From IMG/VR virus record IMGVR_UViG_3300033145_003233, positions 310,001-374,000 of that record: a stretch of 64,000 bases of DNA. The stretch is one strand, 5' to 3'. The notes beneath the pieces are model-generated. The model saw nothing but the letters and a program-made list of their open reading frames with translations. It was not told where the DNA came from and made no database searches. Each line of letters opens with the position of its first letter. Within the stretch, counting starts at the first letter, position 1. Of this stretch, positions 10,638 through 39,953 are shown piece by piece. A program made the position numbers and the translations under genes.

Positions 10638-11597
10638 TTATAATTTTTCCCAAACAGTTATAGAATAACCATCTCCCAATAGGCTTCCACATGGGACTCT
10701 CACCATTTTAATTATTTTAATTATTTTCTCTTTTTCCATCCTCATTAATTTTGTAAAGAAACCTTTCAAATAATTTCTATTATTTTCTAACTTACAAATA
10801 ATATAATCAGTCAAATTAGTGTCAGTATCATAAAACTCTAACATCGAATTGACATGTACATGTCTACTAAAAGGCTTGTCTAGTAAAAATTGTAAAAAAT
10901 CACCATATCTATTGCCTAGTTGTTCCAATGCTCCCAAAGTAAAGCTAACCCCGCCATCTTGAACTAAAAAATCATTATCAGGATAAAACATATCAAAAAT
11001 GCCACCATGAATATCATAATGAAATTTATCTCTGATAAGATTAATGATTGCTTGCGGTTGGCGGACCCAATCAACACCATAATAACTTTTTTCTGGAGCC
11101 ATCTCACAAAAAGATAACAAATTAGCACATGAGCCACAACCGAACTCGTAGATATTATCCTTGTCTTTTAAAAATGAATCAAAAACAAATGCTCTTATTA
11201 AATCTACAAAATTTTTCTCAAAATTATCATCCACTGATCTCACATAATCTCCAAACAAACGAATAGGAGAACCGCTCCTGAAATACTGAGGAGCCAAAGC
11301 AGCTTTGTCATACCCACTCTCAATAAAATTATCTTGTATTTCCCCCCAACCCTTCTCCCATTTTTCTTTTTTACCTTCACCAGATTTAGTAAAAATCTCT
11401 GCATCTATTCTTTTTATGAGTTCAAGTATTATTTTATCTCTTTCCCTCCTATCAATATGCCTATACCTAAAATCCCTATTATTAATTATATTAACACAGG
11501 ATAATGGCATCTCATTTTGATCAATATCAAAAATCATAGAGAAATCTTTAACGGTAAGATTGTGAATGTTTTCTCCCACTTTATTATTTTTCCACAA
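10638..11597 (-). CDS. Class I SAM-dependent methyltransferase
   Basis: IYEFGCGS, YYGVDW, GALEQLG. Confidence 0.75.
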   Translation of the reverse strand: MWKNNKVGENIHNLTVKDFSMIFDIDQNEMPLSCVNIINNRDFRYRHIDRRERDKIILELIKRIDAEIFTKSGEGKKEKWEKGWGEIQDNFIESGYDKAALAPQYFRSGSPIRLFGDYVRSVDDNFEKNFVDLIRAFVFDSFLKDKDNIYEFGCGSCANLLSFCEMAPEKSYYGVDWVRQPQAIINLIRDKFHYDIHGGIFDMFYPDNDFLVQDGGVSFTLGALEQLGNRYGDFLQFLLDKPFSRHVHVNSMLEFYDTDTNLTDYIICKLENNRNYLKGFFTKLMRMEKEKIIKIIKMVRVPCGSLLGDGYSITVWEKL

Positions 11598-12543
11598 AAG
11601 ATAAAATAGATTTAATTATACTATCTTTATCGAGTCCATATTCAGAACGAATCCAATTTCTGTCCCCGTATTTTTTACAAAATTCATCTGGCAAAGATAT
11701 TTTCTTTAATGGCTTATATATATTATTCTCAACCATAAGCTCACTTATTATACTTCCCAATCCACCGATACAAGAATGCTCCTCCACCACAACTACTCTT
11801 TTAGAACCTGATATTATTCTAGCTGCTTCTTTATCATTAAATGGTTTAATCCTAAATACATCTCTATAAGTAGTGAATACTCCTTCTTTATGAGTTAAAT
11901 ATTCTGCTGCTTCTATTACATCATACATGTTAGTCCCAGTAGAAAAAATTACAACATCTGGTTTCCCATAAGGACCACATATTCCAAGACTAAACGGAAC
12001 TGAGTCCTTATTTGGTTCTGGAAAAATAAAGTTATCATATTCTGGCAAGGGAGAATAATCACCCTTATCTAATCTAATATATGTTGGACCATCATTCTCA
12101 TATGCCTTCTGAGCAACATAAGAATTCATAACTGGACCTGAAGGACTATATATAGTTAAATTAGGAAGAGTTCTCATGATCGCGATATCATTAAGAGAAT
12201 GATGAGTAGGCCCATCATTACTAAACGTAAGACCAGCCCCGATACCAATAATTGTAACAGGTAAATTCATGCAACATAAGTCAATTTTTATCTGCTCAAA
12301 ACACCTTTCTGTTACAAATGGAGTGATAGTATAAACACAAACTTTTTTGCCAGCTTTGGCTAACCCAGCCGCTACACTTATCATATTCTGTTCAGCTACG
12401 CCAACATTGATAAATCTACGCCCCAGTTTTTCTTTAAACTTAGATAAACTAAATGCCCACATATCAGCAGTAAGAAAATAAAAATTATCATCATCTTTAA
12501 CTAAATCATATAATCTGTCAAAAAATGCGTCTCTAAGGTCCAT
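11584..12543 (-). CDS. Transketolase, C-terminal subunit
   Basis: INVGVAEQNM, EQIKID, GPTHH, GPTYIRL, VEEH...GGLGS. Confidence 0.9.
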   Translation of the reverse strand: MDLRDAFFDRLYDLVKDDDNFYFLTADMWAFSLSKFKEKLGRRFINVGVAEQNMISVAAGLAKAGKKVCVYTITPFVTERCFEQIKIDLCCMNLPVTIIGIGAGLTFSNDGPTHHSLNDIAIMRTLPNLTIYSPSGPVMNSYVAQKAYENDGPTYIRLDKGDYSPLPEYDNFIFPEPNKDSVPFSLGICGPYGKPDVVIFSTGTNMYDVIEAAEYLTHKEGVFTTYRDVFRIKPFNDKEAARIISGSKRVVVVEEHSCIGGLGSIISELMVENNIYKPLKKISLPDEFCKKYGDRNWIRSEYGLDKDSIIKSILSFVEK

Positions 12544-13312
12544 TTATTTCCCTCCTAGCAATTTCTAATTGTTCATCATTAGGAACTCCGTGATGCCATT
12601 TGGGAACATTCTCCATATAAGATATCCCCTTTCCCTTAACAGTATTAGCTATAATAACCAATGGTTGATATGGATTAACTTTCTTACCCTTCTTAATATA
12701 TTCAATTATCTGTTTTACATCATGGCCATTAATATTACAAACTGCCCATCCACACTGACGAAGCCGACCTCCCAAATATTGTAATGAACAAGAATCCTTC
12801 ATAAAATCAGTGGCGCAAATATTATTCTTATCTATAATTAAAATTATATTATTTAAACTGTGTTGAGCAGCAAATAAAATAGATTCCCAAACAGATCCCT
12901 CATTACATTCTCCATCCCCCATCAGAACATATATGTCCCCTTTTTCTTCATCATTTATTCTAGCCAATGCCATACCACAAGCGACACCAAGACCATGACC
13001 TAAGGACCCAGTATCAAATTCAACTCCCTTAATATTTATATCTGGATGGCCTCCCAATGGATTCCCATTTAAATAACATTCTTCATAATCCTTATCATTT
13101 ATATATCCCAAATCATGCAAAATAGGATAGAACGCCATAGAAACATGTCCTTTACTTAAAATAAATTTATCATCTTCCTCAAGAATTCCACCATAATAAA
13201 GGGCCACCAATATTTCCACACATGAAAGAGCACCTCCGACATGTCCTTTCTTAGATCTATATAATATATCTAAGATCTCATTTCTTAACCATTTACATTT
13301 ATCTTCCAGCAT
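12533..13312 (-). CDS. Transketolase, N-terminal (TPP-binding) subunit
   Basis: GHVGGALS, LSKGH, TGSLGHG, GDGECNEG...N TPP motif. Confidence 0.92.
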   Translation of the reverse strand: MLEDKCKWLRNEILDILYRSKKGHVGGALSCVEILVALYYGGILEEDDKFILSKGHVSMAFYPILHDLGYINDKDYEECYLNGNPLGGHPDINIKGVEFDTGSLGHGLGVACGMALARINDEEKGDIYVLMGDGECNEGSVWESILFAAQHSLNNIILIIDKNNICATDFMKDSCSLQYLGGRLRQCGWAVCNINGHDVKQIIEYIKKGKKVNPYQPLVIIANTVKGKGISYMENVPKWHHGVPNDEQLEIARREINGP

Positions 13313-14358
13313 TAAAATGGACCTTTAAATTTATTTTCATAATTATAAAATTCTTCACCTTCCACATTAATAGAAGATAAACCGAACATCTTTTCAACTG
13401 TTCTAATAATATCAACAGAATCAGGATAAAACTCATTTTCTAGATGTCTAGCCGTAGGACAAGGAGTGTGAGCGAAACCCATTCTTTCTATAGGGCAATC
13501 TAATAACCGGAAACAACTACTATATATTGTCGCTGCCAGTTCCGCACCAAAACCGCAGTGAACCCAGTCATAATCTGCTATTATACATTTACGAGTTTTG
13601 CTAACAGACTCAACCATTGGTTTCAAATCTACAGACGATATACACCTAGCATCTATTATCTCAACAGATATCCCGTACTTCTCTAAAACTTGAGCGGCTC
13701 TCAATGCCTCGACATTCATCCACGAGGTAGCTATAATAGTAACATCCTCTCCGTCCCTTATCTTGCTGGCCTTATCTAGGGGAACTCTAAAACTCTTTTC
13801 TTCTACTTCTCCCTCCTGGAAATATAACCACCTATGTTCCATAATCATAACCGGATTATCATCACGAATAGCTGCTATCATCATTCCCTTTACATCTCTT
13901 ACAGTTGTGGGCATCACAACTTTTAAACCTGGGATATGAGCGAAAATAGATTGCATAGTTTTAGTATGTTGACATCCCTGCCCCCAACCCCTACCTATAA
14001 TATTCCTTATTACGATAGGAATTTTCAATTTACCATCAGACATATATCTAAAACTTGATATTTGATTAATTAATTGATTCATAGCTAGAAGAGAAAAGTC
14101 AACTCTCATATGAACAAGGATAGGTCTCAACCCATTAATTGCTGCTCCAAGAGCAAACCCTGTTAGACTATCTTCAGATAAAGGAGTATCAAAACACCTA
14201 TCTTTTCCAAAAGTTTCTTGCAATCTTTCAGTTGTGCCAAAAATCTTCTTACAATCAGGAACGCCTATGCCATAAATAAAGACATTCTTATCCCTTTCCA
14301 TTTCTTGATAAATAGCCTCGTTAATTGCTTCTTTATATGTTATTTTTTTATCTCTCAT
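13312..14358 (-). CDS. 2-oxoacid/acetoin dehydrogenase E1 beta-like subunit
   Basis: FDTPLSE, GLRP, HIPGLKVVMP, EHRWLY. Confidence 0.9.
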   Translation of the reverse strand: MRDKKITYKEAINEAIYQEMERDKNVFIYGIGVPDCKKIFGTTERLQETFGKDRCFDTPLSEDSLTGFALGAAINGLRPILVHMRVDFSLLAMNQLINQISSFRYMSDGKLKIPIVIRNIIGRGWGQGCQHTKTMQSIFAHIPGLKVVMPTTVRDVKGMMIAAIRDDNPVMIMEHRWLYFQEGEVEEKSFRVPLDKASKIRDGEDVTIIATSWMNVEALRAAQVLEKYGISVEIIDARCISSVDLKPMVESVSKTRKCIIADYDWVHCGFGAELAATIYSSCFRLLDCPIERMGFAHTPCPTARHLENEFYPDSVDIIRTVEKMFGLSSINVEGEEFYNYENKFKGPF

Positions 14359-14360
14359 AA

Positions 14361-16187
14361 TTACTCAAATAAAACATTATTATAAAGTTCACTAACATCT
14401 GAAGATTCTGATACCTTAGCAAATTCCAAACTTCTATATATTTGCTCATCTATTTCTTTATTTACTTTTTCTATGTCCAAATCCGGATGATCTTTAAGCA
14501 ACAAATCTCTTGAATATTCTAAAGGATCTTCTACCTTATTCAACTCATCTCTACTACGATACCCAGCTTCCCAATCATCGCATACTCCAACATGTTCCAG
14601 ACATCTAAGATAATTAAATGACATGAAATGAGGTCGATTAGTTGCCCTTATATCTTCTACTATTTTTTTTGTATCATGATAAATATGATCAACTTTTGTA
14701 GTTTTGTAATTATGCACAGTTAACCTGAAATTATCCATAAAGTCACATATATCATCATAACCATGTCTTTCTTTTTTTGAAGTACACACAGCTAAATCAT
14801 TATCTTCATACACAAATAGAACTGGAAGTTGCCATAAAGATGCCATATTTATACTTTCCCAAAAATTCCCCTCATCAACAGCCCCGTCCCCAAAGAACAC
14901 AACCACTACTCTACCATTTTTTTTCATTTTATTAGCAAACGCTGCCCCAGTCGCTACAGAAATATTGCTAGCAACGATAGCAGATGATGACATATACCCC
15001 TCTTCAGGACAAGCTATATGCATAGAACCAGCTTTGCCTCTAGCCTCTCCAGTTTTTTTCCCATACATTTCTGCAAAAAAGCCATGAGTATCTCTTGTTT
15101 TAGCCAGATATGGAGCATGAGTGCGATATGTAGTAAAAATTTGATCGTCATCATTCAAAGCTCCTATAATTCCAACTGATATAGCTTCTTCTCCTCTCGA
15201 CATATGCATAGGAGTTTTCATTTCATCATCAAAATAATTATCTATTATTACACTCTCTGCTTTTCTAATTAAATAAATCTTTTTATACAACTCCAAACTC
15301 AAGTCCCACTTTTCACTTGTCCTGCCCTGAGAAATAGTAGTCAACTTCTTATCATTAACATATGTTGCAACTGGATCAGATCTCTTAGACCTTGCCACTA
15401 CAATGCATCTCTCCACCTGTCTTTTTGTTGCCCTAATAATTCTGTCAATTCCATATTTTTCTGAAGAATTTAATCTCCATTCACACCACAAAGAAGAAAA
15501 TAAAGCTGCATCTCGAGCTGCTAGAGATGGACTAATAGAACCATAACCTTCATTATTCTCTACTGTTCTAACTTCTTTTACATAAATAGATTGCCCGCCA
15601 GCTTCATAAAGACGCATAGCAAAATCTTCAGCATAATAACTACAAATAAAATTCTTATCAATTCCACCTAACTTGAAATATGCTTCCTTATGGAACATTA
15701 AACCAGCCCCATTAGGGAGAAAAGGACAATAATAACCCCTGCTTAAATGTTTACCACTACGCTTACCAAAAAAGAACCTACTAGGACTAGCTCTTTTACA
15801 TATCACAAATTTATCTATCTTAGGCTTATAAATATAACGACCCAATGCACCTGCTGAAAAATTATATTCATTATTACCTAATTCTATCAAATGATCATAT
15901 AAGCAATCTAATGCATTCTTATTGGGATAACTCAAATCATCACCACTATTAAAAATAAAATCTCCTCTGGCCTCCAACATTCCTATATGAAAACACTGAG
16001 CTGGTTTTACTTCGGCATAAATATATCTAAAATTTTCAGGTAGTTCAAAATCCGGTCTTATATGTCCAATAAAAATAACTTCAAATGGTATATAATTCTC
16101 TTGTAAGCCATCATAATACTCTTTCCAAAAATCTATTTTAATAGCTGGAGAAACAACACTTACTATTGGTTTTATATAAGAACACAT
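14361..16187 (-). CDS. In-frame fusion of a GT2-like glycosyltransferase (N-terminal ~295 aa) and an E1 alpha TPP subunit (C-terminal)
   Basis: N-terminal part aligns with 41560-42417; C-terminal part has PMHMSRGEEA, GSMH and FGDGAVDEG...DN. Confidence 0.8.
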   Translation of the reverse strand: MCSYIKPIVSVVSPAIKIDFWKEYYDGLQENYIPFEVIFIGHIRPDFELPENFRYIYAEVKPAQCFHIGMLEARGDFIFNSGDDLSYPNKNALDCLYDHLIELGNNEYNFSAGALGRYIYKPKIDKFVICKRASPSRFFFGKRSGKHLSRGYYCPFLPNGAGLMFHKEAYFKLGGIDKNFICSYYAEDFAMRLYEAGGQSIYVKEVRTVENNEGYGSISPSLAARDAALFSSLWCEWRLNSSEKYGIDRIIRATKRQVERCIVVARSKRSDPVATYVNDKKLTTISQGRTSEKWDLSLELYKKIYLIRKAESVIIDNYFDDEMKTPMHMSRGEEAISVGIIGALNDDDQIFTTYRTHAPYLAKTRDTHGFFAEMYGKKTGEARGKAGSMHIACPEEGYMSSSAIVASNISVATGAAFANKMKKNGRVVVVFFGDGAVDEGNFWESINMASLWQLPVLFVYEDNDLAVCTSKKERHGYDDICDFMDNFRLTVHNYKTTKVDHIYHDTKKIVEDIRATNRPHFMSFNYLRCLEHVGVCDDWEAGYRSRDELNKVEDPLEYSRDLLLKDHPDLDIEKVNKEIDEQIYRSLEFAKVSESSDVSELYNNVLFE

Positions 16188-16192
16188 AAAAA

Positions 16193-16909
16193 TTACCCTT
16201 TACCATTTTTTAAACAAGATAAAACTTCATTTATTTCCAAATTGGCTCTATAGGCTGAAACCTTATCTATTTTATAAAGTTTTTTAACCAACTGAATCTT
16301 ATCATTATCAACAATAGAAGTATTAATATATACCACTTCACGCCATTTAGGACTTTTTTTATTAATAATCCTTGCTGGCACAAAAGAACAAGCTGACAAA
16401 AAATCATGCACAACATTTAAAAGAGGGATACCCTCATAACATCTTTTAAGCCACATTTCTAAATGAATAACAATAATCTGGTTCATATAATTCTTTACAT
16501 TCTTCAAGATATCATATTCAGAACCTTGAGCATCTATCTTTAAAACATCAATACCGTGACCACTTTGTTCTATAATCTTAGCAAGGCTCTTACATTTGAC
16601 AGGCTTAGAATCAACGACTTCCATACAATCAAATTCTATACGATCATCTTTATAATATTTCATATCGGGAACAAAAAGAGAACTATTTTGCCCATCTTTA
16701 GTTATATAAAGAATCTTCTCTTTCCCATCTGAAATAGCACAATCATAATAGAAATATTTATCATCTATTACCTTATTGCTTTCAAATCTAGGATCCAAAC
16801 CGATATACTTTTCTATGTATTTGCGATATCTTTTTTTATCAAAAGGAAAAACAAATCCACCAAAAGCACCTACATCAAAATATATTAACTTACTTATTTC
16901 TTGCGTAAT
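16193..16909 (-). CDS. FkbM-family methyltransferase (ORF track starts at 16798; frame extends to a likely non-canonical start)
   Basis: LKIDAQGSEY; the in-frame upstream extension encodes motif I YFDVGAFGG. Confidence 0.75.
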   Translation of the reverse strand: MTQEISKLIYFDVGAFGGFVFPFDKKRYRKYIEKYIGLDPRFESNKVIDDKYFYYDCAISDGKEKILYITKDGQNSSLFVPDMKYYKDDRIEFDCMEVVDSKPVKCKSLAKIIEQSGHGIDVLKIDAQGSEYDILKNVKNYMNQIIVIHLEMWLKRCYEGIPLLNVVHDFLSACSFVPARIINKKSPKWREVVYINTSIVDNDKIQLVKKLYKIDKVSAYRANLEINEVLSCLKNGKG

Positions 16910-17870
16910 ATTCTCTCCAGAAATTTAAAGTATCTTTTAATGTAATATCAAAATCAATGGTAGGCTCCCATCCAGTTTCTTTTTTAAATTTATCAACACA
17001 TGGAATTTGCAATGTCACATCAGATGGCCTTAGTAAAGACTTATCAACTATAACCTTCATATTTTTCGTAGTTGACATCCCTATTAATTTATCCAACATC
17101 TCTCTAATAGTCATTGTGAAATTACCACCTATGTTATATACTTCTCCATATTTACACTCATTAACCATCATCCAGTATGCCCTCACTGTGTCCCTAACAT
17201 CAGCAAATGTCCTAACGCTATCCAAATTACCCACTTTAATAATAGGCTCTTGCAATCCAGCTTCTATCTTTGCTATCTGTTTAGCAAAAGCCGCAACTAC
17301 AAAAACATCTCCTCTTTTAGGCCCAGTATGTGTAAACATTCTTGACCTAATAGTTTTTATTCCGTAAGAAATCCAATATTGTAACCCAAGCATATCCTCC
17401 CCAACCTTAGAAACGGCGTAAGGAGAAGCAGGCTTAAGAGGACAATCTTCTTCTATAGGAATATCTTTTTCATCAACCTGTCCGTACACTTCTGAGGACG
17501 AACAAATATGAACAATAGGATCATAGTCTTCCTCTTCTTTTATAATCTTAATCGCCTCTAATAAATTACATGTCCCTATCACATTTGAATCCAATGTGGC
17601 GGCAGGAACATCAAAACTATATGGTACGTAAGACTGAGCAGCCAAATGAAAAATATATTTTGGCATAACCTTCTTAATTATACGATATAAAGAAGAAAAA
17701 TCTGTTAAATCTCCATGATGAAAAGTTACAGAATCCAGCAAATGCAAAATATTTTCTTTTGGAGATCTCCATCTAGTTAACCCATGAACCTCTACATCTG
17801 TTTCTGCTAACAAATAATCTGCTAAATGACTTCCTACAAAACCAGTTACTCCAGTAATAAATGCTTTCAT
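16890..17870 (-). CDS. gmd: GDP-mannose 4,6-dehydratase family
   Basis: TGVTGFVGSHL, HLAAQSYV..SF, SSSEVYG, SPYAVSK, GNLDSVR, LRPSDV. Confidence 0.88.
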   Translation of the reverse strand: MKAFITGVTGFVGSHLADYLLAETDVEVHGLTRWRSPKENILHLLDSVTFHHGDLTDFSSLYRIIKKVMPKYIFHLAAQSYVPYSFDVPAATLDSNVIGTCNLLEAIKIIKEEEDYDPIVHICSSSEVYGQVDEKDIPIEEDCPLKPASPYAVSKVGEDMLGLQYWISYGIKTIRSRMFTHTGPKRGDVFVVAAFAKQIAKIEAGLQEPIIKVGNLDSVRTFADVRDTVRAYWMMVNECKYGEVYNIGGNFTMTIREMLDKLIGMSTTKNMKVIVDKSLLRPSDVTLQIPCVDKFKKETGWEPTIDFDITLKDTLNFWREYYARNK

Positions 17871-17906: not shown

Positions 17907-18623
17907 TTATTGTTCAACTTCCTTTGCCCCATAAGAGTCCCAGCATTTAACCCTTATTTTTTTCAACACTATGCCAGCACAAACCGCTGCCCTCCGATTG
18001 CCCCATAATAATTTATATCCCTTGCTCCCATCAGGAGAGACATATCCCCTTACAACATTAATAAGATTACCATCATTATTATATTCTCCCTGACAATATC
18101 CATGTTTTTTTATACTTTCTGTTAATTCTATTAATCGAGAGGCTGATTTAAGAGCCTGATTTCCTTTTTTAAGCCTCCTTGTATGAATATTATCTATATT
18201 TTTTTTAGCTATTATAAATGTTTCAATCGCCCATTTTGTCAATACATGATTATCTAAATTCTCCAATACTCCCAAACCCATCCTAAGATAATCCCTAACG
18301 AATGTTGCCCATGGAGAATTACCAATTCTAAGAACATTATCTCCATCTTCCCTCCAATATTTCAAAAAAGGATCTTGCCATTCTCGATAAGGATAATATA
18401 ATGATTCTATATCTATAACCTTTATCTTTTTAGGAATCTCTGAAAATATCTTGGCTCTTTTTTTTCTTCTGCCTATCCTGGCTAAATGCTTCGGCAGTTT
18501 TCGAATAAACCTGGCCCTATATTTAGCCCTTTTTCTTGCCCTTCTTCTTGCTTCTTTTTTTTCTTTTTCGCTATCCATTGTAATTAACTTAAAAAGTGCA
18601 TTTAAAAATAGATCTACGGACAT
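17907..18623 (-). CDS. ParB/Srx-fold protein with basic N-terminus
   Basis: ESIKKHGY...YKLLWGNRRAA; paralog of 51427-51906. Confidence 0.6.
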   Translation of the reverse strand: MSVDLFLNALFKLITMDSEKEKKEARRRARKRAKYRARFIRKLPKHLARIGRRKKRAKIFSEIPKKIKVIDIESLYYPYREWQDPFLKYWREDGDNVLRIGNSPWATFVRDYLRMGLGVLENLDNHVLTKWAIETFIIAKKNIDNIHTRRLKKGNQALKSASRLIELTESIKKHGYCQGEYNNDGNLINVVRGYVSPDGSKGYKLLWGNRRAAVCAGIVLKKIRVKCWDSYGAKEVEQ

Positions 18624-19248
18624 GATCTCTTATATTGCCTATAAATTCTATTTTTTTAGCTTTAACATTCAAAGACAGTACTTCCTGTAATTCTTCTCGA
18701 CTATTCCTTCTATGTCCTTCAAACCAGCAGGTATCTCCACAATAACGATTGATTATATTCCATAAAACATTTTTGTCCTTAACATGATGATAAATAGAGA
18801 GAGCAAATATATAATCAAATTTTTCTTCTCCCAAAACTCCTGCAATCGACTCAAAACCCTGTTTGTTTAGATCATAACTAATAAGAGATATGTCACAATT
18901 ATGTCTAGAAAAGATATTAGAAGAAGCATTTAAAAGAATAGAATTTTTATCTAGCCCGACAACACGACCAGCTCCCCTGATTTTAGCATTATGGCACATG
19001 GCCCCCAAATTACATCCTATATCTAATACTGATTTTCCCTCAAAATCATTTGGTAGCTTCATAAATTTGCATCTTGCTTCCGTATCTCTAGTCCCTTTTA
19101 TAAGTCCAATTGTTTGATAAGGCTTTTTTCGATGTTTCTTATTAGTAAGTTTTGCTGCTTTCAAAATTTCCTTTTTATCCTGATCACTTAAATCTATTTT
19201 TTTCATACTTATTACCTTTTTAATATATCGATTAATACTTCTAAGCAC
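18589..19248 (-). CDS. Class I SAM methyltransferase (CmoB/DUF1698-like)
   Basis: GKSVLDIGCNLG, VVGLD, FALSIYHH. Confidence 0.85.
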   Translation of the reverse strand: MLRSINRYIKKVISMKKIDLSDQDKKEILKAAKLTNKKHRKKPYQTIGLIKGTRDTEARCKFMKLPNDFEGKSVLDIGCNLGAMCHNAKIRGAGRVVGLDKNSILLNASSNIFSRHNCDISLISYDLNKQGFESIAGVLGEEKFDYIFALSIYHHVKDKNVLWNIINRYCGDTCWFEGHRRNSREELQEVLSLNVKAKKIEFIGNIRDHVRRSIFKCTF

Positions 19249-19896
19249 CTATAACAATTCAGATAGATTGTGAATTATCGTAATATTTTTATCTGCAAAA
19301 TAACTTCTCCAGTCATACATATTCGTGTACCCGCTAACAAAAATAAAATCCATGTTATTCTCAACCGATACTTCATAATCATATTTCGCATCACCCACAA
19401 AGATAGCTGGTTCTAAATAGCCCTCCTCTCTTATAGATGAAATTATTTCATTCTTAGTTCTTGGGCTACCATAAACTCCCTTAAAATTTTTATGCAACCC
19501 CCTAAGACGTAAAACATTATCCACTTCTTCTTGCTTCCCTCCAGAAACAACAAATATATCCTTCCCACTACCTATAACTCTCGCCAGAAACTTCAATGCC
19601 CCCTGAGTTTCCCTACAACCAGTTAATAAACGAGCACATTCTTTACCAAATTCATCTACTAACATTTGCACTGTTTTGTCATTAATATCTTCTTTTAAAA
19701 CTTCAAAAACAAATTTATTTATTTTTTCATACCTTGTAACCCCTCCCATCTCCTTATGTAGCATTACAAACTTGCGAGCTGCACACTCTCCGTATAGCAT
19801 ACCTATTCTATGAAAAGCTTTAGTTTTAACCCAATTCGAATCAATCAAAACTCCATCGCAATCAAAAAACCATGTATTATATTTTGTTAAGTCCAT
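19249..19896 (-). CDS. HAD-family phosphatase
   Basis: FDCDGV, VSG, GSPRTK, FVGDAKYD. Confidence 0.9.
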   Translation of the reverse strand: MDLTKYNTWFFDCDGVLIDSNWVKTKAFHRIGMLYGECAARKFVMLHKEMGGVTRYEKINKFVFEVLKEDINDKTVQMLVDEFGKECARLLTGCRETQGALKFLARVIGSGKDIFVVSGGKQEEVDNVLRLRGLHKNFKGVYGSPRTKNEIISSIREEGYLEPAIFVGDAKYDYEVSVENNMDFIFVSGYTNMYDWRSYFADKNITIIHNLSELL

Positions 19897-20669
19897 AATC
19901 TTTGCTGTATCCCCCTTTTCAAAAATTCTCTACATTTTTCTTCCATAAAAACAGCGTCAGTCCCCACAGCTATCATCCGATAACCTTGAATAGTAGCTTC
20001 TTTAATTTTTTCCACAGTTGGCCTCACTACATGAATACCCATAGGTATATTATGCTCTTTAGACCTTTCTTGATAAAAAGATAAAATATTCTTATAATCT
20101 TTGCTTTCAAAATCGCCTGGCTTACCGAGAGAACCAGATAAATCATATGGGCCAATAAAAGTTCCATCAATCCCCTTAACACTCAAAATAAAATCTAAAT
20201 CTACCATCGCATCAACATGCTCAATCTGAAGAATAATAGAAATCTCATTATTGGCATTTCTCACGTAATTATCAAAATCGCTTCCGTACCAATTAGCACG
20301 ACTATAACCAAAACTTCTTCTTCCAAGAGGAGGATATAAAGCCTCTCCTACCGCCTGCTCAGCCTCACTATGATTTTTTATCATCGGTATAATTAAACCC
20401 TTGGCCCCGGCGTCCAAAACTCTGTGAATCCATATATAATCATTCTTAGGAATCCTAACTATAGGAGTTATATCAAACCTTTCAATAGTTCTTATAAGAT
20501 TAGTCATGGACTCCATACCAATAACCCCATGCTCCATATCTATACAAATCCATTTAAGATTATTATTACAATTATTGGCCATTATTTCAATAATAGCAGG
20601 ATGAGGTATTTGTATCCAAGCCCCAAAACAAGCCGAATTGTTTTTCAAAGAATCTTTTAATTTATTCAA
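19887..20669 (-). CDS. HpcH/HpaI class II pyruvate aldolase
   Basis: IDMEHG, LDAGAKG, YPPLGRRSFG, QIEH, FIGPYDLS. Confidence 0.9.
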   Translation of the reverse strand: MNKLKDSLKNNSACFGAWIQIPHPAIIEIMANNCNNNLKWICIDMEHGVIGMESMTNLIRTIERFDITPIVRIPKNDYIWIHRVLDAGAKGLIIPMIKNHSEAEQAVGEALYPPLGRRSFGYSRANWYGSDFDNYVRNANNEISIILQIEHVDAMVDLDFILSVKGIDGTFIGPYDLSGSLGKPGDFESKDYKNILSFYQERSKEHNIPMGIHVVRPTVEKIKEATIQGYRMIAVGTDAVFMEEKCREFLKRGIQQRLWT

Positions 20670-21615
20670 AATCTTCCTCCGTAACTAAATTTAATGGCTC
20701 TGCTCCATTTAAAACTCTAATACAATTTTGAGCTGCCCCCAGTTCCATCAAAAATCTAGAATTTCTATCTGAAGCTCCAATATGAGCAGTAAAAAGGACA
20801 TTATCATATTCTCTCAAACCACCATCATAAGGTTCATTTTCAAATACATCTAACGCTGCACCCCCTAAATGATGATTATAAATACAACTCTCTAAATCTT
20901 TCTCATTTAATATAGGACCTCTCGATGTATTAACGATATAAGATCCCTTTTTCATACTCGACATATCGTTGAGAGTTACAAAATGATAATTTTTTTCATT
21001 CAAAGGAATATGGATAGTAACCAAATCGCTTTTTTCAAACAACTCATTTTTATTTACCCACTTAATCCCATCTATACCAGCATTCGGTTTTATATCACAA
21101 GCATATATATTTTTAGGATTAAATGGTTTTAATCTTTCTATAACTCTACTACCTATTCTTCCTACTCCCAAGACACCTATTGATAAATCTCTTATAGATG
21201 CCCCAAGAATACGATTCCATCTCTTATCTCTTACCGATTTATCAGAAATAACAATGCCCCTAAACAAGTTTATTATTTGAGCAATAGCTAGATCTGCCAC
21301 AGAATCACAAGGAGCATTAGGGGTATAGGCAACTGTAATATTATTTTTCTGACAATACGGAAAATCTATACCATCTAAACCAGATCCCACTCTTGAAATA
21401 ACTTTCAATTCTTTGAAATCCTTAATAAATTCACCTGCATATGATTCCGTTCCAGCTATAACCCCATCTATGCCGTCCAATAAATCTCTCACTTCTCCCT
21501 TTTTTATTCTTCTCCCTAGTGAATTATAAGTTATATTCCATCCTGTTTCATTAAGAAGCTTAACTGGCAAATCTCCACATAAACCAAATGGATAAGTAGC
21601 TATAAATATATTCAT
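20662..21615 (-). CDS. D-isomer-specific 2-hydroxyacid dehydrogenase (PGDH-like)
   Basis: GVGRIG, HIPL, NTSRG, LDVFENEP, AHIG. Confidence 0.9.
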   Translation of the reverse strand: MNIFIATYPFGLCGDLPVKLLNETGWNITYNSLGRRIKKGEVRDLLDGIDGVIAGTESYAGEFIKDFKELKVISRVGSGLDGIDFPYCQKNNITVAYTPNAPCDSVADLAIAQIINLFRGIVISDKSVRDKRWNRILGASIRDLSIGVLGVGRIGSRVIERLKPFNPKNIYACDIKPNAGIDGIKWVNKNELFEKSDLVTIHIPLNEKNYHFVTLNDMSSMKKGSYIVNTSRGPILNEKDLESCIYNHHLGGAALDVFENEPYDGGLREYDNVLFTAHIGASDRNSRFLMELGAAQNCIRVLNGAEPLNLVTEEDFE

Positions 21616-22376
21616 ATAGATCTATCCTCTCCCTTTATAGTAGAGCGTTTTTTTATTATTTCCACAATCCTATTTCTATCTTCTGGAGTGTCCACACTAA
21701 TGCTATCATGCTCAGTATATCTCATATGTATCTCTATGTCATTTTCTATCAATCTGTTCAACCCTATGCCCTCCATATTTTCCAATGGTGATGATTTTAA
21801 ATAGCTATATAGTTTTAACATCTCCCCAGAAAATGCATATACTCCTATTTGTTTTATTATCTTAACATCATCATTCGTTCTTTTTGTTTTCTCATCATGA
21901 TATGGTATAGAATATCTAGAAAAATATAGCGCCTTTTGATTCCTTGACACCACAACTTTGACAGCATTGCTATCATACATATCGTAAGGATCATGCACCT
22001 CAGTATAAAAATTAACAATTGAAGGAGACAAATCCACATTTAATGTTTCGGTGTTGAATAAAGGCTCATCTCCCTGAATAACAATATACCTATCCGCAAA
22101 TGTCCCGCTATCTTCCAATCTTTCAACAACTTCTGCTGCCCTGTCTAGACAATCTGTATGACTATCCTTAGTCATTATAAAAGGAATAGAAAAATCCGTA
22201 CATTTTCTAGCTATGTCTGAACTATCAGTAGCAACAAAAACTTTGTCCCATTTATCCCAGACCATAACGGAATCATAGACACGTTTTATCATTGGCATCC
22301 CCAGGATATCACACAAAGGCTTACCTGGAAAACGAGAAGACTGATAACGAGCAGGTATAATACCTATATATTTCAT
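21612..22376 (-). CDS. kdsB: CMP-Kdo synthetase-like cytidylyltransferase
   Basis: IPARYQSSRFPGKPL, IQGDEP, ALYFSR, SVDTPED. Confidence 0.85.
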   Translation of the reverse strand: MKYIGIIPARYQSSRFPGKPLCDILGMPMIKRVYDSVMVWDKWDKVFVATDSSDIARKCTDFSIPFIMTKDSHTDCLDRAAEVVERLEDSGTFADRYIVIQGDEPLFNTETLNVDLSPSIVNFYTEVHDPYDMYDSNAVKVVVSRNQKALYFSRYSIPYHDEKTKRTNDDVKIIKQIGVYAFSGEMLKLYSYLKSSPLENMEGIGLNRLIENDIEIHMRYTEHDSISVDTPEDRNRIVEIIKKRSTIKGEDRSI

Positions 22377-22379
22377 TTT

Positions 22380-23060
22380 TTACTTTACCTCCTTTAATAT
22401 TCCATTAACATAAAAACTATCAAATTTAGTTGGTGTTATAATTTTAAAATCTATCCCATATTCCCATAAAGAAAACAAACATTCATCTACTAACCTATCC
22501 TTCTCTAGACATTCTTTCCAAGTCGCATCATCAGTATACCCGTCCCCATAACAATGATGATTTTCTTCTTCTTTATCTAATTGACCTTTTGGATGCAAAG
22601 TAAAACCATCCATACCAACCACATATATATTTTCTGCCCCCATCAAATGAGCTAACATAATAGCTAAAGCACCAGCTGTCCTAAAATGACCAGATATCTT
22701 CCCATCCTTATACCCAATACTCTCTTTTCTCGCCTTTAACAATCTAAATGTATAATCAACAACATAATAATCTCCATCATAATGACGTTTTATAAGCTTC
22801 TCTGGCATACCAATACCAAATAAAAATGAAGATTTCTTATCAACACATTGACCCAAATCTCGATATCTTTGTTTATTTGTCCATAAATGATAATCAGGAG
22901 TACACAATGAAGACATATAATTTATTCCTATAGTTTTTATATTTTTCTCAATTATTAAATTAAGTATCTCATCCTTATATTTTTTTATAGATGAACCACT
23001 ACCAATAACTATAATATCTTTACCTTTTTCTATGCCCTCACACTTTTTAAATTCTATCAT
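22380..23060 (-). CDS. Maf/MptE-like (GT42/GT29-related) transferase
   Basis: IVIGSGSSI, TIGIN, MGAENIYVVGMDGF. Confidence 0.7.
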   Translation of the reverse strand: MIEFKKCEGIEKGKDIIVIGSGSSIKKYKDEILNLIIEKNIKTIGINYMSSLCTPDYHLWTNKQRYRDLGQCVDKKSSFLFGIGMPEKLIKRHYDGDYYVVDYTFRLLKARKESIGYKDGKISGHFRTAGALAIMLAHLMGAENIYVVGMDGFTLHPKGQLDKEEENHHCYGDGYTDDATWKECLEKDRLVDECLFSLWEYGIDFKIITPTKFDSFYVNGILKEVK

Positions 23061-23806
23061 TATATATTACTTCTCCTGACAAATTTATAAAAACTTATAT
23101 CATATTTATTAATTTCCTTTAACAAATCTTGAATACTTTTATCTTCCCAAGGAAACTTAATAGAGCGTTTTGAAACCCTCTTCATTACTTCACCATATTT
23201 TCTAAGTCCATAATAGTCGCATAGTCTTATTTGATCCTTGTGCCCATTATCAACATATCCTACAAAATCTATTTTTTCTTTTATATTGTATTTAGCAACT
23301 TGTAACATTTCTTCCATATCTTTATCCGTATTGTGCTCTTTGCGAGCATTCCATCCAAACATACCATGATAACCAAAATCCTTATCTGCACTATATTTCC
23401 TTGTGGCTACAGATTTAACATTTTCTTTTTTCTCCAGCCCAGATATCTGTTTAACCATCAAATTACATGCTACTTCTTTTTCCAAGCACCAATTCATAAA
23501 TCTCTTTAAATCTCTTTTATTCCTATTAAACAATTCACTTCCCCAAGAATCCTCTGATTCTATCCCATGATAAAATTGAGATATCCACCTTTGCACTGGA
23601 TCTCTAAGAAAAGTAAAATAAGAAAATTCTTCAGTATCAAATTGTTTATGCACTCCATATGGGAAATGTCCAGATATAATATCTGGAACATGTCCTTTTT
23701 TTGCGAAATATTTAAACCAAAAACTAAATTTTTGATTTTTCAAAATATAATTAATAGAGCTTCCTGATGTTTTCTGTATATGTAGAAAGATAATCACTAG
23801 TTCCAC
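23060..23806 (-). CDS. Sulfotransferase family 2 protein
   Basis: FLHIQKTSGSSI (5'-PSB) and FLRDPVQRWISQFYH (3'-PB). Confidence 0.85.
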   Translation of the reverse strand: MELVIIFLHIQKTSGSSINYILKNQKFSFWFKYFAKKGHVPDIISGHFPYGVHKQFDTEEFSYFTFLRDPVQRWISQFYHGIESEDSWGSELFNRNKRDLKRFMNWCLEKEVACNLMVKQISGLEKKENVKSVATRKYSADKDFGYHGMFGWNARKEHNTDKDMEEMLQVAKYNIKEKIDFVGYVDNGHKDQIRLCDYYGLRKYGEVMKRVSKRSIKFPWEDKSIQDLLKEINKYDISFYKFVRRSNI

Positions 23807-27365: not shown

Positions 27366-28036
27366 TTATTCTTTTCCCCAATCTAAATCCTTATTTTTGA
27401 AAAGCACATCTCCATAATGACGAAAACTTCCATCAGCATTATAATAAGCAAAAATATTTACTACCTCAAAACAAGGGGCAACTAATTCTATTAATTCAGG
27501 CAAAAGAGCCATACCCTCGTACATCTCTTTTTCATTATATTCGCAATAAAGATATCTTGTATTTTTTAATGTCTCTTTAGCTCCATTTATCATGTCCCTT
27601 TCTGAACCTTCTACATCAGACCATATAAAATCTATAACTTCTAATCCGGATTCTTTATACCAAGTGTCTAATCTAATTGTTTTAACCTTTATAGGAGAAC
27701 TATTATATTTTCTCGGTTGTAAACAAGTTGGTTTTCTCAGAGATGAAGAATCCTTATGAGATACATCCAAATAAAAATCTGCTTCCCGTCCCTATCAGAT
27801 ACTGCCATATTATAAAAAGTGCAAGAAGAGAATAGCGGACCCATCCTTTTTCTTAAACGTTTAAAAAGACCATGATGAGGTTCAAATCCAAAAACATGAG
27901 CATCTGGAGAATATTTAAAAAAACTAGCAATTTCTTTGCCCTTATTTACTCCTATATCTAGTATGATTTTTGATCTGGCTATAATAGGAAAAATTATAAA
28001 CTTCGCCCTATCTACATCAATTTTTTTTTCGTTCAT
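27366..28036 (-). pseudogene. FkbM-family methyltransferase split by a one-base frameshift
   Basis: N-half has ILDIGVNKG...GFEP; C-half has SSSL...DFIWSDVEGSE. One extra T in the T5 run (A5 on the plus strand, 27773-27777) restores KQIFYLDVSHK. Confidence 0.75.
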
Positions 28037-32140: not shown

Positions 32141-32873
32141 CCCAAACTCCTAGATAATTAGCTAACAAAGATTTCTTGTTATAAACATACATCCTAAGCT
32201 TAAAACGATTTTTCTTAACCTCTCTGATTAAATTAACAATATCTTTCGCGGTTTGGTGTTGAGAATTCATATCCTTATTTTTTTCTTTGACAGAATATCT
32301 GGTCTCATTATCATCTAGCCAAAAATATCTTGAATCATATAGATCGAAACCCACAAAGATTATCTTCTTATATCTCATCCAAACAGCAAAATGTAGAGCA
32401 TTAGTCAAAGTATTTTTACCATGATATATACCTCTTTCAAAAATACTCTTTTTTCTCCACAATCCCACACCAGGATTGTTGCCCCTTAACTTCTTATCTT
32501 TAACAACAATGTATTGACTTTTAAACTTTTCCCTATTATCTTTTAAAGAATAATCATAAGCATGAGGAGAATGTTCTGATAAATCATGAAGGATCAAACA
32601 ACTATCTTTATAACTACAATTCATTATGCTATAAAAATTATCTATGTTTTCTTCTCCATGTACCCTCTTTTTTATATTCGCTTGTTCTCTCACTAGGTAG
32701 TAAGTGGTAGGAATATCAGAGAAACAAAACCAATTAAATGAACAAGAATCATAACAGGACAACCTTTCAAATTCATGTTCTTTTAATTTATTTATAGACG
32801 ATCCGCATCCATAAATAATAATAGTTTTTGATTTTTTAAACTCTTTTAATTTATTTTCGTTTATTAAAGGCAT
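32133..32873 (-). CDS. Maf/GT42/GT29-like transferase
   Basis: IIYGCGSSIN, SFNW, YKKIIFVGFDLY. Confidence 0.6.
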   Translation of the reverse strand: MPLINENKLKEFKKSKTIIIYGCGSSINKLKEHEFERLSCYDSCSFNWFCFSDIPTTYYLVREQANIKKRVHGEENIDNFYSIMNCSYKDSCLILHDLSEHSPHAYDYSLKDNREKFKSQYIVVKDKKLRGNNPGVGLWRKKSIFERGIYHGKNTLTNALHFAVWMRYKKIIFVGFDLYDSRYFWLDDNETRYSVKEKNKDMNSQHQTAKDIVNLIREVKKNRFKLRMYVYNKKSLLANYLGVWDG

Positions 32874-39940: not shown

Positions 39941-39953
39941 TAAAGGAGATCTC

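What the first reader, a model, noticed from the sequence alone, without database searches (positions are those of the whole stretch)
19249..23060. KdsB without KdsA: aldolase, dehydrogenase, HAD and Maf-like cassette for an unknown keto-acid sugar
Seen: contiguous Maf-like transferase, kdsB-like gene, 2-hydroxyacid dehydrogenase, HpcH aldolase and HAD phosphatase, with no kdsA or kdsD. Known: HpcH aldolases condense pyruvate with aldehydes to give 3-deoxy-2-keto acids, and KdsB activates such acids with CTP. Inference: a pyruvate-aldolase route to a non-Kdo CMP-ulosonic or ulosaric acid, transferred by the adjacent Maf-like enzyme.
Basis: partly seen in the sequence, partly recalled or inferred. 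Interest (0 to 1): 0.65.

Follow-up and report, generated by a model that had tools for sequence, protein, structure and literature searches.

The report
Aldolase-fed CMP-ulosonic acid phage cassette
Inside a roughly 76-kb sugar-building island of a 548-kb virus sits a conserved gene unit (a diverged KdsB-type activating enzyme, a dehydrogenase and a pyruvate aldolase, here joined by a phosphatase and a Maf-like transferase) that most likely makes and attaches an acidic keto-sugar other than Kdo by a route I found described in no paper.

Summary
The five genes are real, sit at the stated coordinates and are tightly packed on the minus strand. The whole 547,943-bp genome, an IMG/VR virus record, has no KdsA and no KdsD. 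It is a triad of KdsB-like, D-2-hydroxyacid dehydrogenase and HpcH aldolase, found in 9 of 13 distinct loci that carry this KdsB subfamily. These are mostly huge-virus contigs, plus one planctomycete genome. No HpcH aldolase lies beside any of 147 other KdsB genes. The HAD phosphatase is unique to this genome. The Maf-like gene recurs in about half of the loci.

The KdsB-like protein keeps every catalytic residue. It forms a separate clade (support 100) with invariant changes at positions that other KdsBs hold almost invariant: E210 to G, Q211 to L, SGT to DCL, and a new Arg. The planctomycete also keeps an ordinary KdsB and a KdsA-sized gene. The 226-aa Maf-like protein models as a stand-alone Maf catalytic domain (Z 16).

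Best reading: a pyruvate-aldolase route to a CMP-ulosonic or CMP-ulosaric acid that is not Kdo. The sugar's identity and the dehydrogenase's role remain inferred. I rate it a new variant of a known kind, of moderately high interest.

The parts
22380..23060 (-). 226-aa stand-alone Maf/MptE-like domain, the putative transferase for the CMP-activated sugar acid
   Evidence: Pfam MptE-like scores 25 bits, below the cut-off. The family is rare: 235 representatives among 1.84 billion. The AF2 model has pLDDT 95.3. The best structural match is the central domain of the Maf glycosyltransferase 5mu5 (Z 16.0, 190 residues aligned). MptE and SteA follow at Z 12.4, and the sialyltransferases (CstII and others) at Z 9-12. 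Homologs lie near the KdsB-like gene in L098, L100, L104, L006, L013 and L014/L017.
21612..22376 (-). KdsB-family cytidylyltransferase of a diverged, mostly viral subfamily, the putative CMP-ulosonate synthetase
   Evidence: See for family assignment. The catalytic R10, R15, K19, Q98, D100, R157, Y185, R213 and D235 are kept. The changes E210G, Q211L, H181Q, N96I/V and SGT to DCL, plus a new invariant Arg166, are present in 29 of 29 subfamily members or nearly so. The clade has support 100 and a stem of 0.71.
20662..21615 (-). NAD-type D-2-hydroxyacid dehydrogenase, overlapping both neighbouring genes; its substrate is unknown
   Evidence: 2-Hacid_dh_C scores 150 bits. The catalytic Arg, Glu and His, the GxGxxG motif and the Asp are kept, but the Arg-Ser motif of the phosphoglycerate dehydrogenases is not. 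Orthologs at 42-66% identity sit in triads elsewhere.
19887..20669 (-). HpcH/HpaI class II (metal-dependent) pyruvate aldolase, the putative ulosonate synthase and the only HpcH gene in the genome
   Evidence: HpcH_HpaI scores 87 bits. The best equivalog models (HpaI 159, GarL 129-135, RhmA 125 bits) all fall far below their cut-offs. The residues matching YfaU H49, R74, E153 and D179 are kept. It is a single copy.
19249..19896 (-). HAD-IA phosphatase, an accessory specific to this genome
   Evidence: HAD_2 scores 38 bits. The DxD and GDxxxD motifs are present. No homolog occurs in any related locus.
23060..23806 (-). Sulfotransferase-like gene directly upstream, a possible tailoring enzyme
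   Evidence: Sulfotransfer_2 scores 32.7 bits. A homolog (39% identity) follows the dehydrogenase in L099, and a Sulfotransfer_2 gene lies in L015.
17907..19248 (-). SAM methyltransferase (18589-19248) and a 238-aa protein of unknown function (17907-18623), conserved neighbours of the module
   Evidence: Homologs lie together in L097 and L098 (72-76% and 48-60% identity), with a weak one in L013. The 238-aa protein has no family; only a faint ParB_N-like resemblance was seen.

Best explanation
The unit is a biosynthetic module for a CMP-activated 2-keto (ulosonic or ulosaric) sugar acid that is not Kdo. A class II pyruvate aldolase, not a PEP-dependent KdsA or NeuB synthase, forms the carbon skeleton. 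The proposed steps follow, with their status marked. (1) The HpcH aldolase condenses pyruvate, or another 2-oxo acid such as hydroxypyruvate, with an aldehyde to give a 4-hydroxy-2-oxo acid. This is inferred from the family, the intact catalytic residues and the synteny. (2) The D-2-hydroxyacid dehydrogenase supplies or trims a 2-oxo/2-hydroxy acid partner, for example D-glycerate to hydroxypyruvate or tartronate semialdehyde. Its involvement rests on synteny; the exact reaction is a guess. (3) In this genome a HAD phosphatase removes a phosphate from a precursor or from the product. This is inferred, and the step is not general. (4) The diverged KdsB-type enzyme joins the anomeric hydroxyl of the acid to CMP using CTP. 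The catalytic machinery is shown to be intact; the substrate is inferred to differ from Kdo. (5) The stand-alone Maf-like domain transfers the acid to an unknown acceptor. The fold is shown; the activity is inferred. The module is one of four CMP-sugar-acid modules in a roughly 76-kb glycan island of a 548-kb virus, which presumably decorates virion or infected-cell surface molecules.
For: Synteny: KdsB-like, dehydrogenase and aldolase are contiguous, often with overlapping stop and start codons, in the window, L006, L008, L013 and the L101 group. The same three genes occur in rearranged form in L098, L099 and L100. Specificity: an HpcH aldolase lies within about 6-8 kb in 9 of 13 distinct loci of this KdsB subfamily, and in 0 of 79 genomic plus 0 of 68 other viral KdsB loci. 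Divergence: the subfamily is a clade with support 100. It has invariant replacements at positions that are 93-98% conserved in 147 other KdsBs, while all catalytic residues are kept. Paralogy: the planctomycete genome that carries the triad also holds pieces of an ordinary KdsB (SGT, RH..GIY and LEQLR motifs) and a KdsA-sized DAHP_synth_1 gene. Book-keeping: this genome has 4 cytidylyltransferases, 3 NeuB and 1 HpcH. Each NeuB lies 1-6 kb from a PseF-like cytidylyltransferase, which leaves the KdsB-like gene paired with the aldolase. No KdsA or KdsD occurs here or in five related viral records. The aldolase, dehydrogenase and HAD all keep their catalytic residues. The Maf-like fold is clear, and Maf enzymes are reported to accept CMP-Kdo as donor (bioRxiv 10.1101/2020.06.03.131540). 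An independent parallel exists: in Clostridia, Akkermansia and Psychromonas, a KdsB gene sits next to a fusion of an HMGL-like (pyruvate-lyase fold) domain with this same MptE-like domain, in three of the seven loci with a HAD homolog alongside.
Against: No chemistry was tested. The protein still passes NCBI's KdsB subfamily cut-off. Close relatives of the KdsB-like gene (59-78% identity) occur without an aldolase in L014/L017, L102 and L104, and in the 73%-complete 350-kb record G006. The one-synthase-per-transferase count holds only in G000 and G008. That E210, Q211 and H181 contact Kdo is my recollection of the E. coli KdsB structures; I could not read the source paper. Only Q98, Y185, D100 and D235 were confirmed from papers. 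Bacterial relatives of the aldolase at about 50% identity pair with a 2-hydroxyacid dehydrogenase in catabolic settings without KdsB. The dehydrogenase has no assigned reaction. The fusion of the MptE-like domain to a lyase-fold domain leaves open that this domain is biosynthetic and not a transferase.
Confidence: 0.55

Rival explanations
1. The enzyme is an ordinary CMP-Kdo synthetase. Kdo would come from a Gram-negative host, or from the aldolase acting as a Kdo aldolase in reverse (D-arabinose plus pyruvate), which would be a KdsA-independent route to the known sugar.
For: The protein passes the KdsB subfamily model and barely passes the kdsB equivalog model. All of its best PDB hits are KdsB. 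It occurs without an aldolase in several relatives. Maf enzymes can transfer Kdo.
Against: E210 is Gly in 29 of 29 members, against Glu in 98% of 147 other KdsBs. Further invariant changes are present. The subfamily is a separate clade. It coexists with an ordinary KdsB and a KdsA-sized gene in one bacterium. The dehydrogenase would be left without a role.
Confidence: 0.2
2. The dehydrogenase and aldolase do not feed the KdsB-like enzyme. They would make a separate building block, for example a hydroxy-acid substituent such as glycerate or a 2,4-dihydroxy acid, or they would break down host sugar acids as an auxiliary metabolic pair.
For: Bacterial homologs of the aldolase pair with a 2-hydroxyacid dehydrogenase beside alginate lyase, heparinase, GntR or transporter genes, with no KdsB. 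A second 2-hydroxyacid dehydrogenase is coupled to a PseF-like cytidylyltransferase near a NeuB gene (window 37297-38977), so such dehydrogenases accompany CMP-sugar modules that already have their own synthase.
Against: The aldolase is adjacent only to this KdsB subfamily (9 of 13 loci against 0 of 147). The genes are translationally coupled inside a glycan island. The triad dehydrogenase is only about 30% identical to the catabolic ones.
Confidence: 0.12
3. The 226-aa MptE-like protein is not the transferase. It would be a nucleotide-dependent biosynthetic enzyme (kinase or pyrophosphokinase-like, as MptE is) acting on a precursor.
For: The MptE pyrophosphokinase and SteA match at Z 12.4, and thiamine pyrophosphokinases at Z 7.4-8.2. 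In seven cellular genomes the same domain is fused to an HMGL-like lyase-fold domain, that is, to a putative synthase and not to an acceptor-binding domain.
Against: The Maf catalytic domain is the best match by a clear margin (Z 16.0 over 190 residues), and several sialyltransferase families follow. About eight such small paralogs accompany four cytidylyltransferases in this genome, as expected for CMP-sugar transferases.
Confidence: 0.2

Closest known systems
Kdo pathway of Gram-negative bacteria (KdsD, KdsA, KdsC, KdsB, then WaaA/KpsS/KpsC)
   Same: The cytidylyltransferase belongs to the KdsB family and keeps the full catalytic set. A phosphatase is present in this genome. The product would be a CMP-linked 2-keto acid sugar.
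   Different: There is no KdsD and no PEP-dependent KdsA anywhere in the genome. The phosphatase is HAD-IA, not KdsC type. A class II pyruvate aldolase and a 2-hydroxyacid dehydrogenase stand in their place. The sugar-side residues of the KdsB-like enzyme are changed. No GT30, GT99 or GT107 Kdo transferase was recognised.
Nonulosonic acid modules (NeuB/PseI/LegI synthase with NeuA/PseF/LegF) and Maf flagellin glycosyltransferases
   Same: The logic is the same: synthase, then CMP activation, then a Maf-type transferase. Three such NeuB plus PseF-like modules lie in the same island. The fold of the 226-aa protein matches the Maf catalytic domain.
   Different: The synthase is an aldolase that uses pyruvate, not a PEP-dependent NeuB. 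The activating enzyme is of KdsB type, not NeuA/PseF type. The Maf-like protein lacks the N- and C-terminal domains of the roughly 600-aa Mafs. The genome has no flagellin.
Catabolic HpcH-family aldolases (HpaI, GarL/DDG aldolase, YfaU/RhmA)
   Same: Same fold and catalytic residues, with E about 1e-31 to each.
   Different: Scores are far below every equivalog cut-off. The gene lies in a glycan-biosynthesis operon coupled to a cytidylyltransferase, which implies the synthetic direction.
KdsB plus HMGL-like::MptE-like fusion cassette, in three loci with a HAD homolog, seen here in Clostridia, Akkermansia and Psychromonas genomes (uncharacterised as far as I could find)
   Same: It combines a KdsB-family gene, a metal-dependent pyruvate-lyase-fold enzyme and the same MptE-like domain, with a HAD homolog in three of the seven loci and no nearby KdsA.
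   Different: The lyase fold is different (DRE-TIM/HMGL instead of HpcH). The MptE-like domain is fused instead of free. There is no dehydrogenase. The KdsB in that cassette keeps E210.

Membership tests
KdsB (CMP-Kdo synthetase, EC 2.7.7.38) | Sequence membership by curated models | tested here: met
   NF003952 scores 238 bits against a cut-off of 193. TIGR00466 scores 159.1 against 155.2, a borderline pass. NF009905 scores 233, below its cut-off of 255. All PDB hits are KdsB.
KdsB (CMP-Kdo synthetase, EC 2.7.7.38) | Catalytic and CTP-binding residues (E. coli R10, R15, K19, Q98, D100, D235) | tested here: met
   These residues are invariant in all 29 subfamily members. Their roles were taken from PMC2901514 and PMC12199768.
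KdsB (CMP-Kdo synthetase, EC 2.7.7.38) | Residues of the sugar-binding domain that are near-invariant in KdsBs (E210, Q211, H181, N96, S74-G75-T76, G218) | tested here: not met
   E210 is G, Q211 is L, H181 is Q, N96 is I or V, SGT is DCL and G218 is D, each in 97-100% of the subfamily. In 147 other KdsBs, E210 is 98% conserved and G75 98%. That these residues contact Kdo is recalled from memory, not verified.
KdsB (CMP-Kdo synthetase, EC 2.7.7.38) | Pathway partners KdsA and KdsD that supply Kdo | tested here: not met
   No DAHP_synth_1 and no SIS domain occur in the 548-kb genome. No KdsA occurs in five related viral records. A host could supply them.
KdsB (CMP-Kdo synthetase, EC 2.7.7.38) | Activity on Kdo | not testable with these tools
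   This needs an enzyme assay.
HpcH/HpaI class II aldolases | Pfam membership, with metal ligands and catalytic Arg and His | tested here: met
   PF03328 scores 87 bits against a cut-off of 25. The residues matching YfaU H49, R74, E153 and D179 are conserved.
HpcH/HpaI class II aldolases | Equivalence to a characterised member (HpaI, GarL, RhmA) | tested here: not met
   The scores of 159, 129-135 and 125 bits fall well below cut-offs of 369-441.
D-isomer-specific 2-hydroxyacid dehydrogenases | Both Pfam domains, the catalytic Arg-Glu-His and the NAD fold | tested here: met
   The two domains score 150 and 63 bits. The motifs are kept in the alignment to 1wwk, 2cuk and 6bii.
3-phosphoglycerate dehydrogenase (SerA type) | Equivalog score and the Arg-Ser substrate motif | tested here: not met
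   TIGR01327 scores 181 against a cut-off of 454. The query has Gly-Thr where 1wwk has Arg-Ser. The role of that motif is recalled from memory.
Maf flagellin glycosyltransferases / MptE-like (PF01973) | Pfam gathering score | tested here: not met
   25.0 bits against a cut-off of 34.6.
Maf flagellin glycosyltransferases / MptE-like (PF01973) | Fold of the central catalytic domain | tested here: met
   Z 16.0, rmsd 3.2 over 190 residues to 5mu5 residues 261-510. The next family scores Z 12.4.
Maf flagellin glycosyltransferases / MptE-like (PF01973) | Full Maf architecture and a flagellin acceptor | tested here: not met
   The protein is 226 aa, the catalytic domain only. The genome has no Flagellin_N.
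HAD-IA phosphatases | Motifs I to IV | tested here: met
   The DxD motif lies at residues 12-14 and the GDxxxD motif near the C-terminus. HAD_2 scores 38 bits. No equivalog model reached its cut-off.

The most novel reading that the evidence does not exclude
The module makes a CMP-activated 3-deoxy-2-ulosaric (dicarboxylic) acid, or another aldolase-derived keto acid that has never been seen in nucleotide-activated form. An example would be a Dha-like heptulosaric acid, or a hexulosaric acid built from pyruvate plus a glycerate-derived aldehyde. Three hints point this way. The nearest aldolases, GarL and HpaI, handle dicarboxylic substrates. Bacterial aldolase plus dehydrogenase pairs recall the garL/garR logic. 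The KdsB-like enzyme loses the residues I recall as binding the Kdo diol tail and gains an invariant Arg166 in an inserted loop. If true, this would be the first pyruvate-aldolase-dependent route to a CMP-sugar and the first activating enzyme for an ulosaric acid. It would be spread mainly by huge phages.
Probability: 0.15. Interest if true: 0.85.

Novelty: new variant of a known kind. Interest (0 to 1): 0.62.

Why it matters
All known CMP-activated sugar acids (Kdo, sialic, legionaminic and pseudaminic acids) are built by PEP-dependent synthases. A conserved pairing of a KdsB paralog with a class II pyruvate aldolase would add a second way of making such sugars, and probably a new sugar. It also gives a concrete gene set for testing where unusual keto-acid sugars come from, such as ulosaric acids, whose activated donors are unknown. 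Finally, it shows that huge viruses carry and spread large, modular glycan toolkits. This genome has four CMP-sugar-acid modules, many methyltransferases, sulfotransferases and about eight Maf-like domains. These presumably remodel virion or host surfaces.

Tried and rejected
- **Phosphoglycerate dehydrogenase route.** I considered 3-phosphoglycerate to phosphohydroxypyruvate, followed by the HAD. The equivalog score is far below its cut-off, the Arg-Ser motif of 1wwk is Gly-Thr here, and the HAD is not conserved. I kept only the looser idea of an unphosphorylated 2-oxo/2-hydroxy acid.
- **One synthase per cytidylyltransferase as a general rule.** It holds in G000 and G008 but not in G006, G007 or G010, which are incomplete records. 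I use it only as supporting book-keeping for this genome.
- **Literature.** Searches combining KdsB, HpcH, 2-hydroxyacid dehydrogenase, Kdo aldolase, glycan clusters or huge phages found no description of this pairing.
- **The E. coli KdsB structure paper.** It is not held, so the contact roles of E210, Q211 and H181 rest on memory.
- **Sequencing runs.** None was listed for the region, so read laying was not used and there is no evidence on expression or habitat.
- **Virus hallmarks.** Terminase_6N and Terminase_6C were not found. Eight large ORFs gave only collagen-like tail-fibre PHROG hits and one glycosyltransferase hit. The viral nature therefore rests on the IMG/VR and CheckV labels, 29 tRNAs, homing-endonuclease and Hint-domain genes, and phage-like relatives.
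- **The 238-aa conserved neighbour (17907-18623).** It has no family, only three close homologs, and only a faint ParB_N-like resemblance. It is left as unknown.
- **Other points.** No alternative genetic code was needed; TAA, TAG and TGA all serve as stops.

Full report
**Where the finding lies**

The window is bases 310,001-374,000 of a single 547,943-bp IMG/VR virus record that CheckV rates as 100% complete. The record has 33.6% G+C, and nearly all of its genes from about 100 kb onward lie on the minus strand. It uses the standard stop codons and carries 29 tRNA genes. I could not confirm a terminase with two Pfam models. Eight large ORFs gave only collagen-like tail-fibre matches. The viral label therefore rests on IMG/VR and CheckV, and on phage-like features:
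- a GIY-YIG/NUMOD3 endonuclease;
- a Hint-domain ORF and an Apyc1-like gene;
- relatives whose flanks carry topoisomerase and nucleoside deoxyribosyltransferase genes among many small ORFs.

**The observation**

Five minus-strand ORFs occupy 19249-23060 exactly as described. In transcription order they are:
- 22380-23060, an MptE/Maf-like protein of 226 aa. Pfam gives 25 bits, below the gathering score.
- 21612-22376, a CTP_transf_3 protein of KdsB type.
- 20662-21615, a D-2-hydroxyacid dehydrogenase.
- 19887-20669, an HpcH/HpaI aldolase.
- 19249-19896, a HAD-IA hydrolase.

Neighbouring genes abut or overlap by 1-10 bp. The KdsB assignment is firm at family level. NF003952 scores 238 bits against a cut-off of 193, TIGR00466 scores 159.1 against 155.2, and the 13 best PDB matches are all KdsB. 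The genome has no DAHP_synth_1 (KdsA) and no SIS domain (KdsD).

**Surroundings**

The cassette sits in a glycan-biosynthesis island that runs from about window position 2,195 to at least genome position 388,151, roughly 76 kb. The island holds:
- many SAM methyltransferases and GT1, GT2 and GT4 glycosyltransferases;
- two sulfotransferase-like genes;
- several NDP-sugar dehydratase or epimerase genes;
- a pyruvate-dehydrogenase-E1-like alpha/beta pair and a split transketolase.

The genome has four CTP_transf_3 genes, three NeuB-type synthases and one HpcH aldolase. The other three cytidylyltransferases are PseF-like, and each lies 1-6 kb from a NeuB gene. That leaves the only KdsB-type enzyme paired with the only aldolase. 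About eight weak MptE-like small ORFs are scattered through the genome. One scores over the Pfam cut-off and lies one gene away from the fourth cytidylyltransferase.

**Synteny**

The KdsB-like protein belongs to a tightly conserved subfamily: more than 100 clusters share 60-80% identity. Among one genome each of 185,579 species, only one close relative appeared, on a phage-like contig binned as a Woesearchaeota MAG. The other 79 best hits were ordinary KdsBs at 32-43% identity. In viral contigs the subfamily occurs in records of 34-351 kb.

Across 13 distinct loci the neighbours are as follows:
- An HpcH aldolase lies within the 6-8 kb flank in 9 loci. It is contiguous as KdsB-dehydrogenase-aldolase in the window, L006, L008, L013 and the L101 group. 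It is rearranged in L098, L099 and L100. In the marine contig L015 it is a divergent copy (31% identity) directly downstream of the KdsB-like gene, with no orthologous dehydrogenase.
- An orthologous dehydrogenase is present in 9 loci.
- A strong homolog of the Maf-like protein is present in 7 loci.
- A homolog of the HAD is present in none.

None of 79 genomic and 68 other viral KdsB loci has such an aldolase nearby. One triad (L013) lies in a planctomycete contig next to rml genes, ribosomal protein L25, Pth and Prs, so the unit is not purely viral.

Some evidence cuts the other way. L014/L017, L102 and L104 have the KdsB-like gene without an aldolase. The 350-kb record G006 (73% complete) has the KdsB-like gene and the dehydrogenase, but no HpcH in the sequence held. 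Bacterial relatives of the aldolase at about 50% identity pair with a different 2-hydroxyacid dehydrogenase (about 30% identical) in catabolic contexts without KdsB.

**Is the substrate Kdo?**

I aligned 29 subfamily members with 147 other KdsBs. All catalytic and CTP-binding residues are kept (E. coli R10, R15, K19, Q98, D100, R157, Y185, R213, D235). Sixteen positions are fixed in the subfamily and rare elsewhere. The most notable are:
- E210 to G, where Glu is found in 98% of the others;
- Q211 to L;
- S74-G75-T76 to D-C-L, where Gly is 98% and Thr 97% in the others;
- G218 to D;
- an invariant Arg166 in a loop that most KdsBs lack.

Two further positions differ from most other KdsBs but fall outside those sixteen: H181 is Q, and N96 is I or V.

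The subfamily is one clade with SH-aLRT support 100 on a stem of 0.71 substitutions per site.

The planctomycete genome with the triad also contains, at contig ends, pieces of an ordinary KdsB with the SGT, RH..GIY and LEQLR motifs. It also has two DAHP_synth_1 genes, one of KdsA size. A diverged paralog beside a housekeeping Kdo pathway argues for a different substrate.

One caveat applies. Papers I could read confirm roles for Q98, Y185, D100 and D235 and place N96 in the substrate pocket. That E210, Q211 and H181 bind the Kdo hydroxyls is my recollection only, because the structure paper is not held.

**The other enzymes**

- The aldolase keeps the His, Arg, Glu and Asp residues of YfaU, GarL and HpaI. 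It reaches no equivalog cut-off.
- The dehydrogenase keeps the Arg-Glu-His triad and an NAD-type fold. It lacks the Arg-Ser motif seen in the phosphoglycerate dehydrogenase 1wwk. I therefore dropped 3-phosphoglycerate as its substrate.
- The HAD has intact motifs and is not of KdsC type.
- The Maf-like protein belongs to a rare family: 235 representatives at E of 0.001 or better among 1.84 billion. Its AlphaFold model (pLDDT 95.3) matches the central catalytic domain of the Maf glycosyltransferase 5mu5 best (Z 16.0, 190 residues). MptE and SteA follow at Z 12.4, CstII at 11.9 and animal sialyltransferases at 9-10.
- Maf enzymes have been reported to transfer Kdo from CMP-Kdo to flagellin (bioRxiv 10.1101/2020.06.03.131540). 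A Maf-type domain using a KdsB-made donor therefore has precedent.

**An independent parallel**

In seven cellular genomes a KdsB homolog lies beside a 526-545-aa fusion protein. The genomes are five Clostridia, one Akkermansia and one Psychromonas. The fusion joins an N-terminal HMGL-like domain to a C-terminal domain that matches the phage MptE-like family over nearly its full length. Pfam confirmed the HMGL-like domain, a metal-dependent pyruvate or acyl-CoA lyase fold, only in L029; the other six were tied to it by sequence similarity. In three of the seven loci a HAD homolog follows. The DAHP_synth_1 genes of those genomes are 346-363-aa frames, and none lies beside the KdsB locus. This again joins a KdsB-type enzyme to a pyruvate-lyase fold and to this domain without a nearby KdsA. 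It also raises the possibility that the MptE-like domain is biosynthetic and not a transferase.

**Verdict**

The most likely reading (about 0.55) is a module for a CMP-activated keto-acid sugar other than Kdo, whose carbon chain is made by a class II pyruvate aldolase. Status of the evidence:
- Shown: the genes, their intact catalytic residues, the specific and recurrent linkage, the diverged sugar side of the KdsB-like enzyme, and the Maf-like fold.
- Inferred: the direction of the aldolase reaction, the role of the dehydrogenase, the role of the HAD, and the transferase activity.
- Unknown: the sugar and the acceptor.

The rivals are ordinary CMP-Kdo synthesis (0.2) and an unrelated role for the dehydrogenase and aldolase (0.12). 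A further rival, a biosynthetic role for the MptE-like protein (0.2), concerns that one part only. I found no paper describing this pairing and rate it a new variant of a known kind.

Noticed in passing
window 2195-64000 and on to genome position 388,151 (L186:1-14154): A glycan island of roughly 76 kb in a 548-kb virus. It holds 3 NeuB-type synthases, 4 cytidylyltransferases, about 8 small MptE/Maf-like ORFs, well over a dozen methyltransferases, GT1/GT2/GT4 genes and two sulfotransferase-like genes (23060-23806, 49473-50132).
   Followed up: partly
window 37297-38977 (also L015:15554-17142): A second pairing of a 2-hydroxyacid dehydrogenase (38003-38977) overlapping a PseF-like cytidylyltransferase (37297-38010), 2 kb from a short NeuB (34520-35311). 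The pair is conserved (49% and 67% identity) in marine Tara contigs that also carry a GT29-like sialyltransferase, PIG-L, a sulfotransferase and a radical SAM/SPASM gene. The role of the dehydrogenase in a NeuB module is unexplained.
   Followed up: partly
L024, L029, L046, L049, L053, L086, L096 (cellular genomes; e.g. L029:4731-8860): A KdsB homolog lies beside a 526-545-aa fusion of an HMGL-like lyase-fold domain (Pfam-confirmed only in L029) with an MptE-like domain. A HAD homolog follows in three loci, and in three a further MptE-like protein lies upstream (fused to a Glyphos_transf N-terminus in L029). The genomes are Clostridia, Akkermansia and Psychromonas, and no KdsA lies nearby. I found no description of this cassette.
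   Followed up: partly
window 11584-16187: A pyruvate-dehydrogenase-E1-like alpha subunit carries an extra N-terminal region of about 290 aa with a faint GT2-like match (14361-16187, 608 aa). With it are an E1 beta (13312-14358) and a split transketolase (12533-13312, 11584-12543), next to a GDP-mannose/dTDP-glucose 4,6-dehydratase-like gene (16890-17870). This looks like two-carbon branching of a keto-sugar. The dehydratase and E1 genes are syntenic in L097.
   Followed up: no
window 48000-49457: A NeuB-SAF protein with a C-terminal cupin domain (485 aa), an unusual architecture.
   Followed up: no
window 32851-33660: A MerR-HTH / GIY-YIG / NUMOD3 homing-endonuclease-like gene lies inside the glycan island, followed by a gap of about 210 bp.
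   Followed up: no
window 27366-28036: The 134-aa ORF 27366-27770 matches only the C-terminal half (profile positions 89-164) of the FkbM methyltransferase domain. It overlaps a 99-aa ORF (27737-28036) upstream. This may be a frameshifted or split gene.
   Followed up: no
window 39026-40553: Two plus-strand genes form the only inversion in the otherwise one-directional island: a 304-aa protein without a family and a Methyltransf_24 protein.
   Followed up: no
L186:2423-3614 and L186:9948-10778 (genome 376,423-384,778): A Hint/intein-like ORF, a peptide deformylase and a metallo-beta-lactamase-fold protein with a sub-threshold match to the anti-Pycsar protein Apyc1.
   Followed up: no
genome 171,686-183,550; genome 486,468-501,887: A cluster of 27 of the 29 tRNA genes. 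A single 5,139-aa ORF lies among other very large ORFs (439-502 kb) that have no PHROG match.
   Followed up: no
L098:8801-9730, L100:9695-12739, L006:9403-10326, L097:1254-2822: Radical SAM genes (some B12-binding, some SPASM) repeatedly sit inside or next to the KdsB-dehydrogenase-aldolase unit in related loci. None was seen next to it in this window.
   Followed up: no
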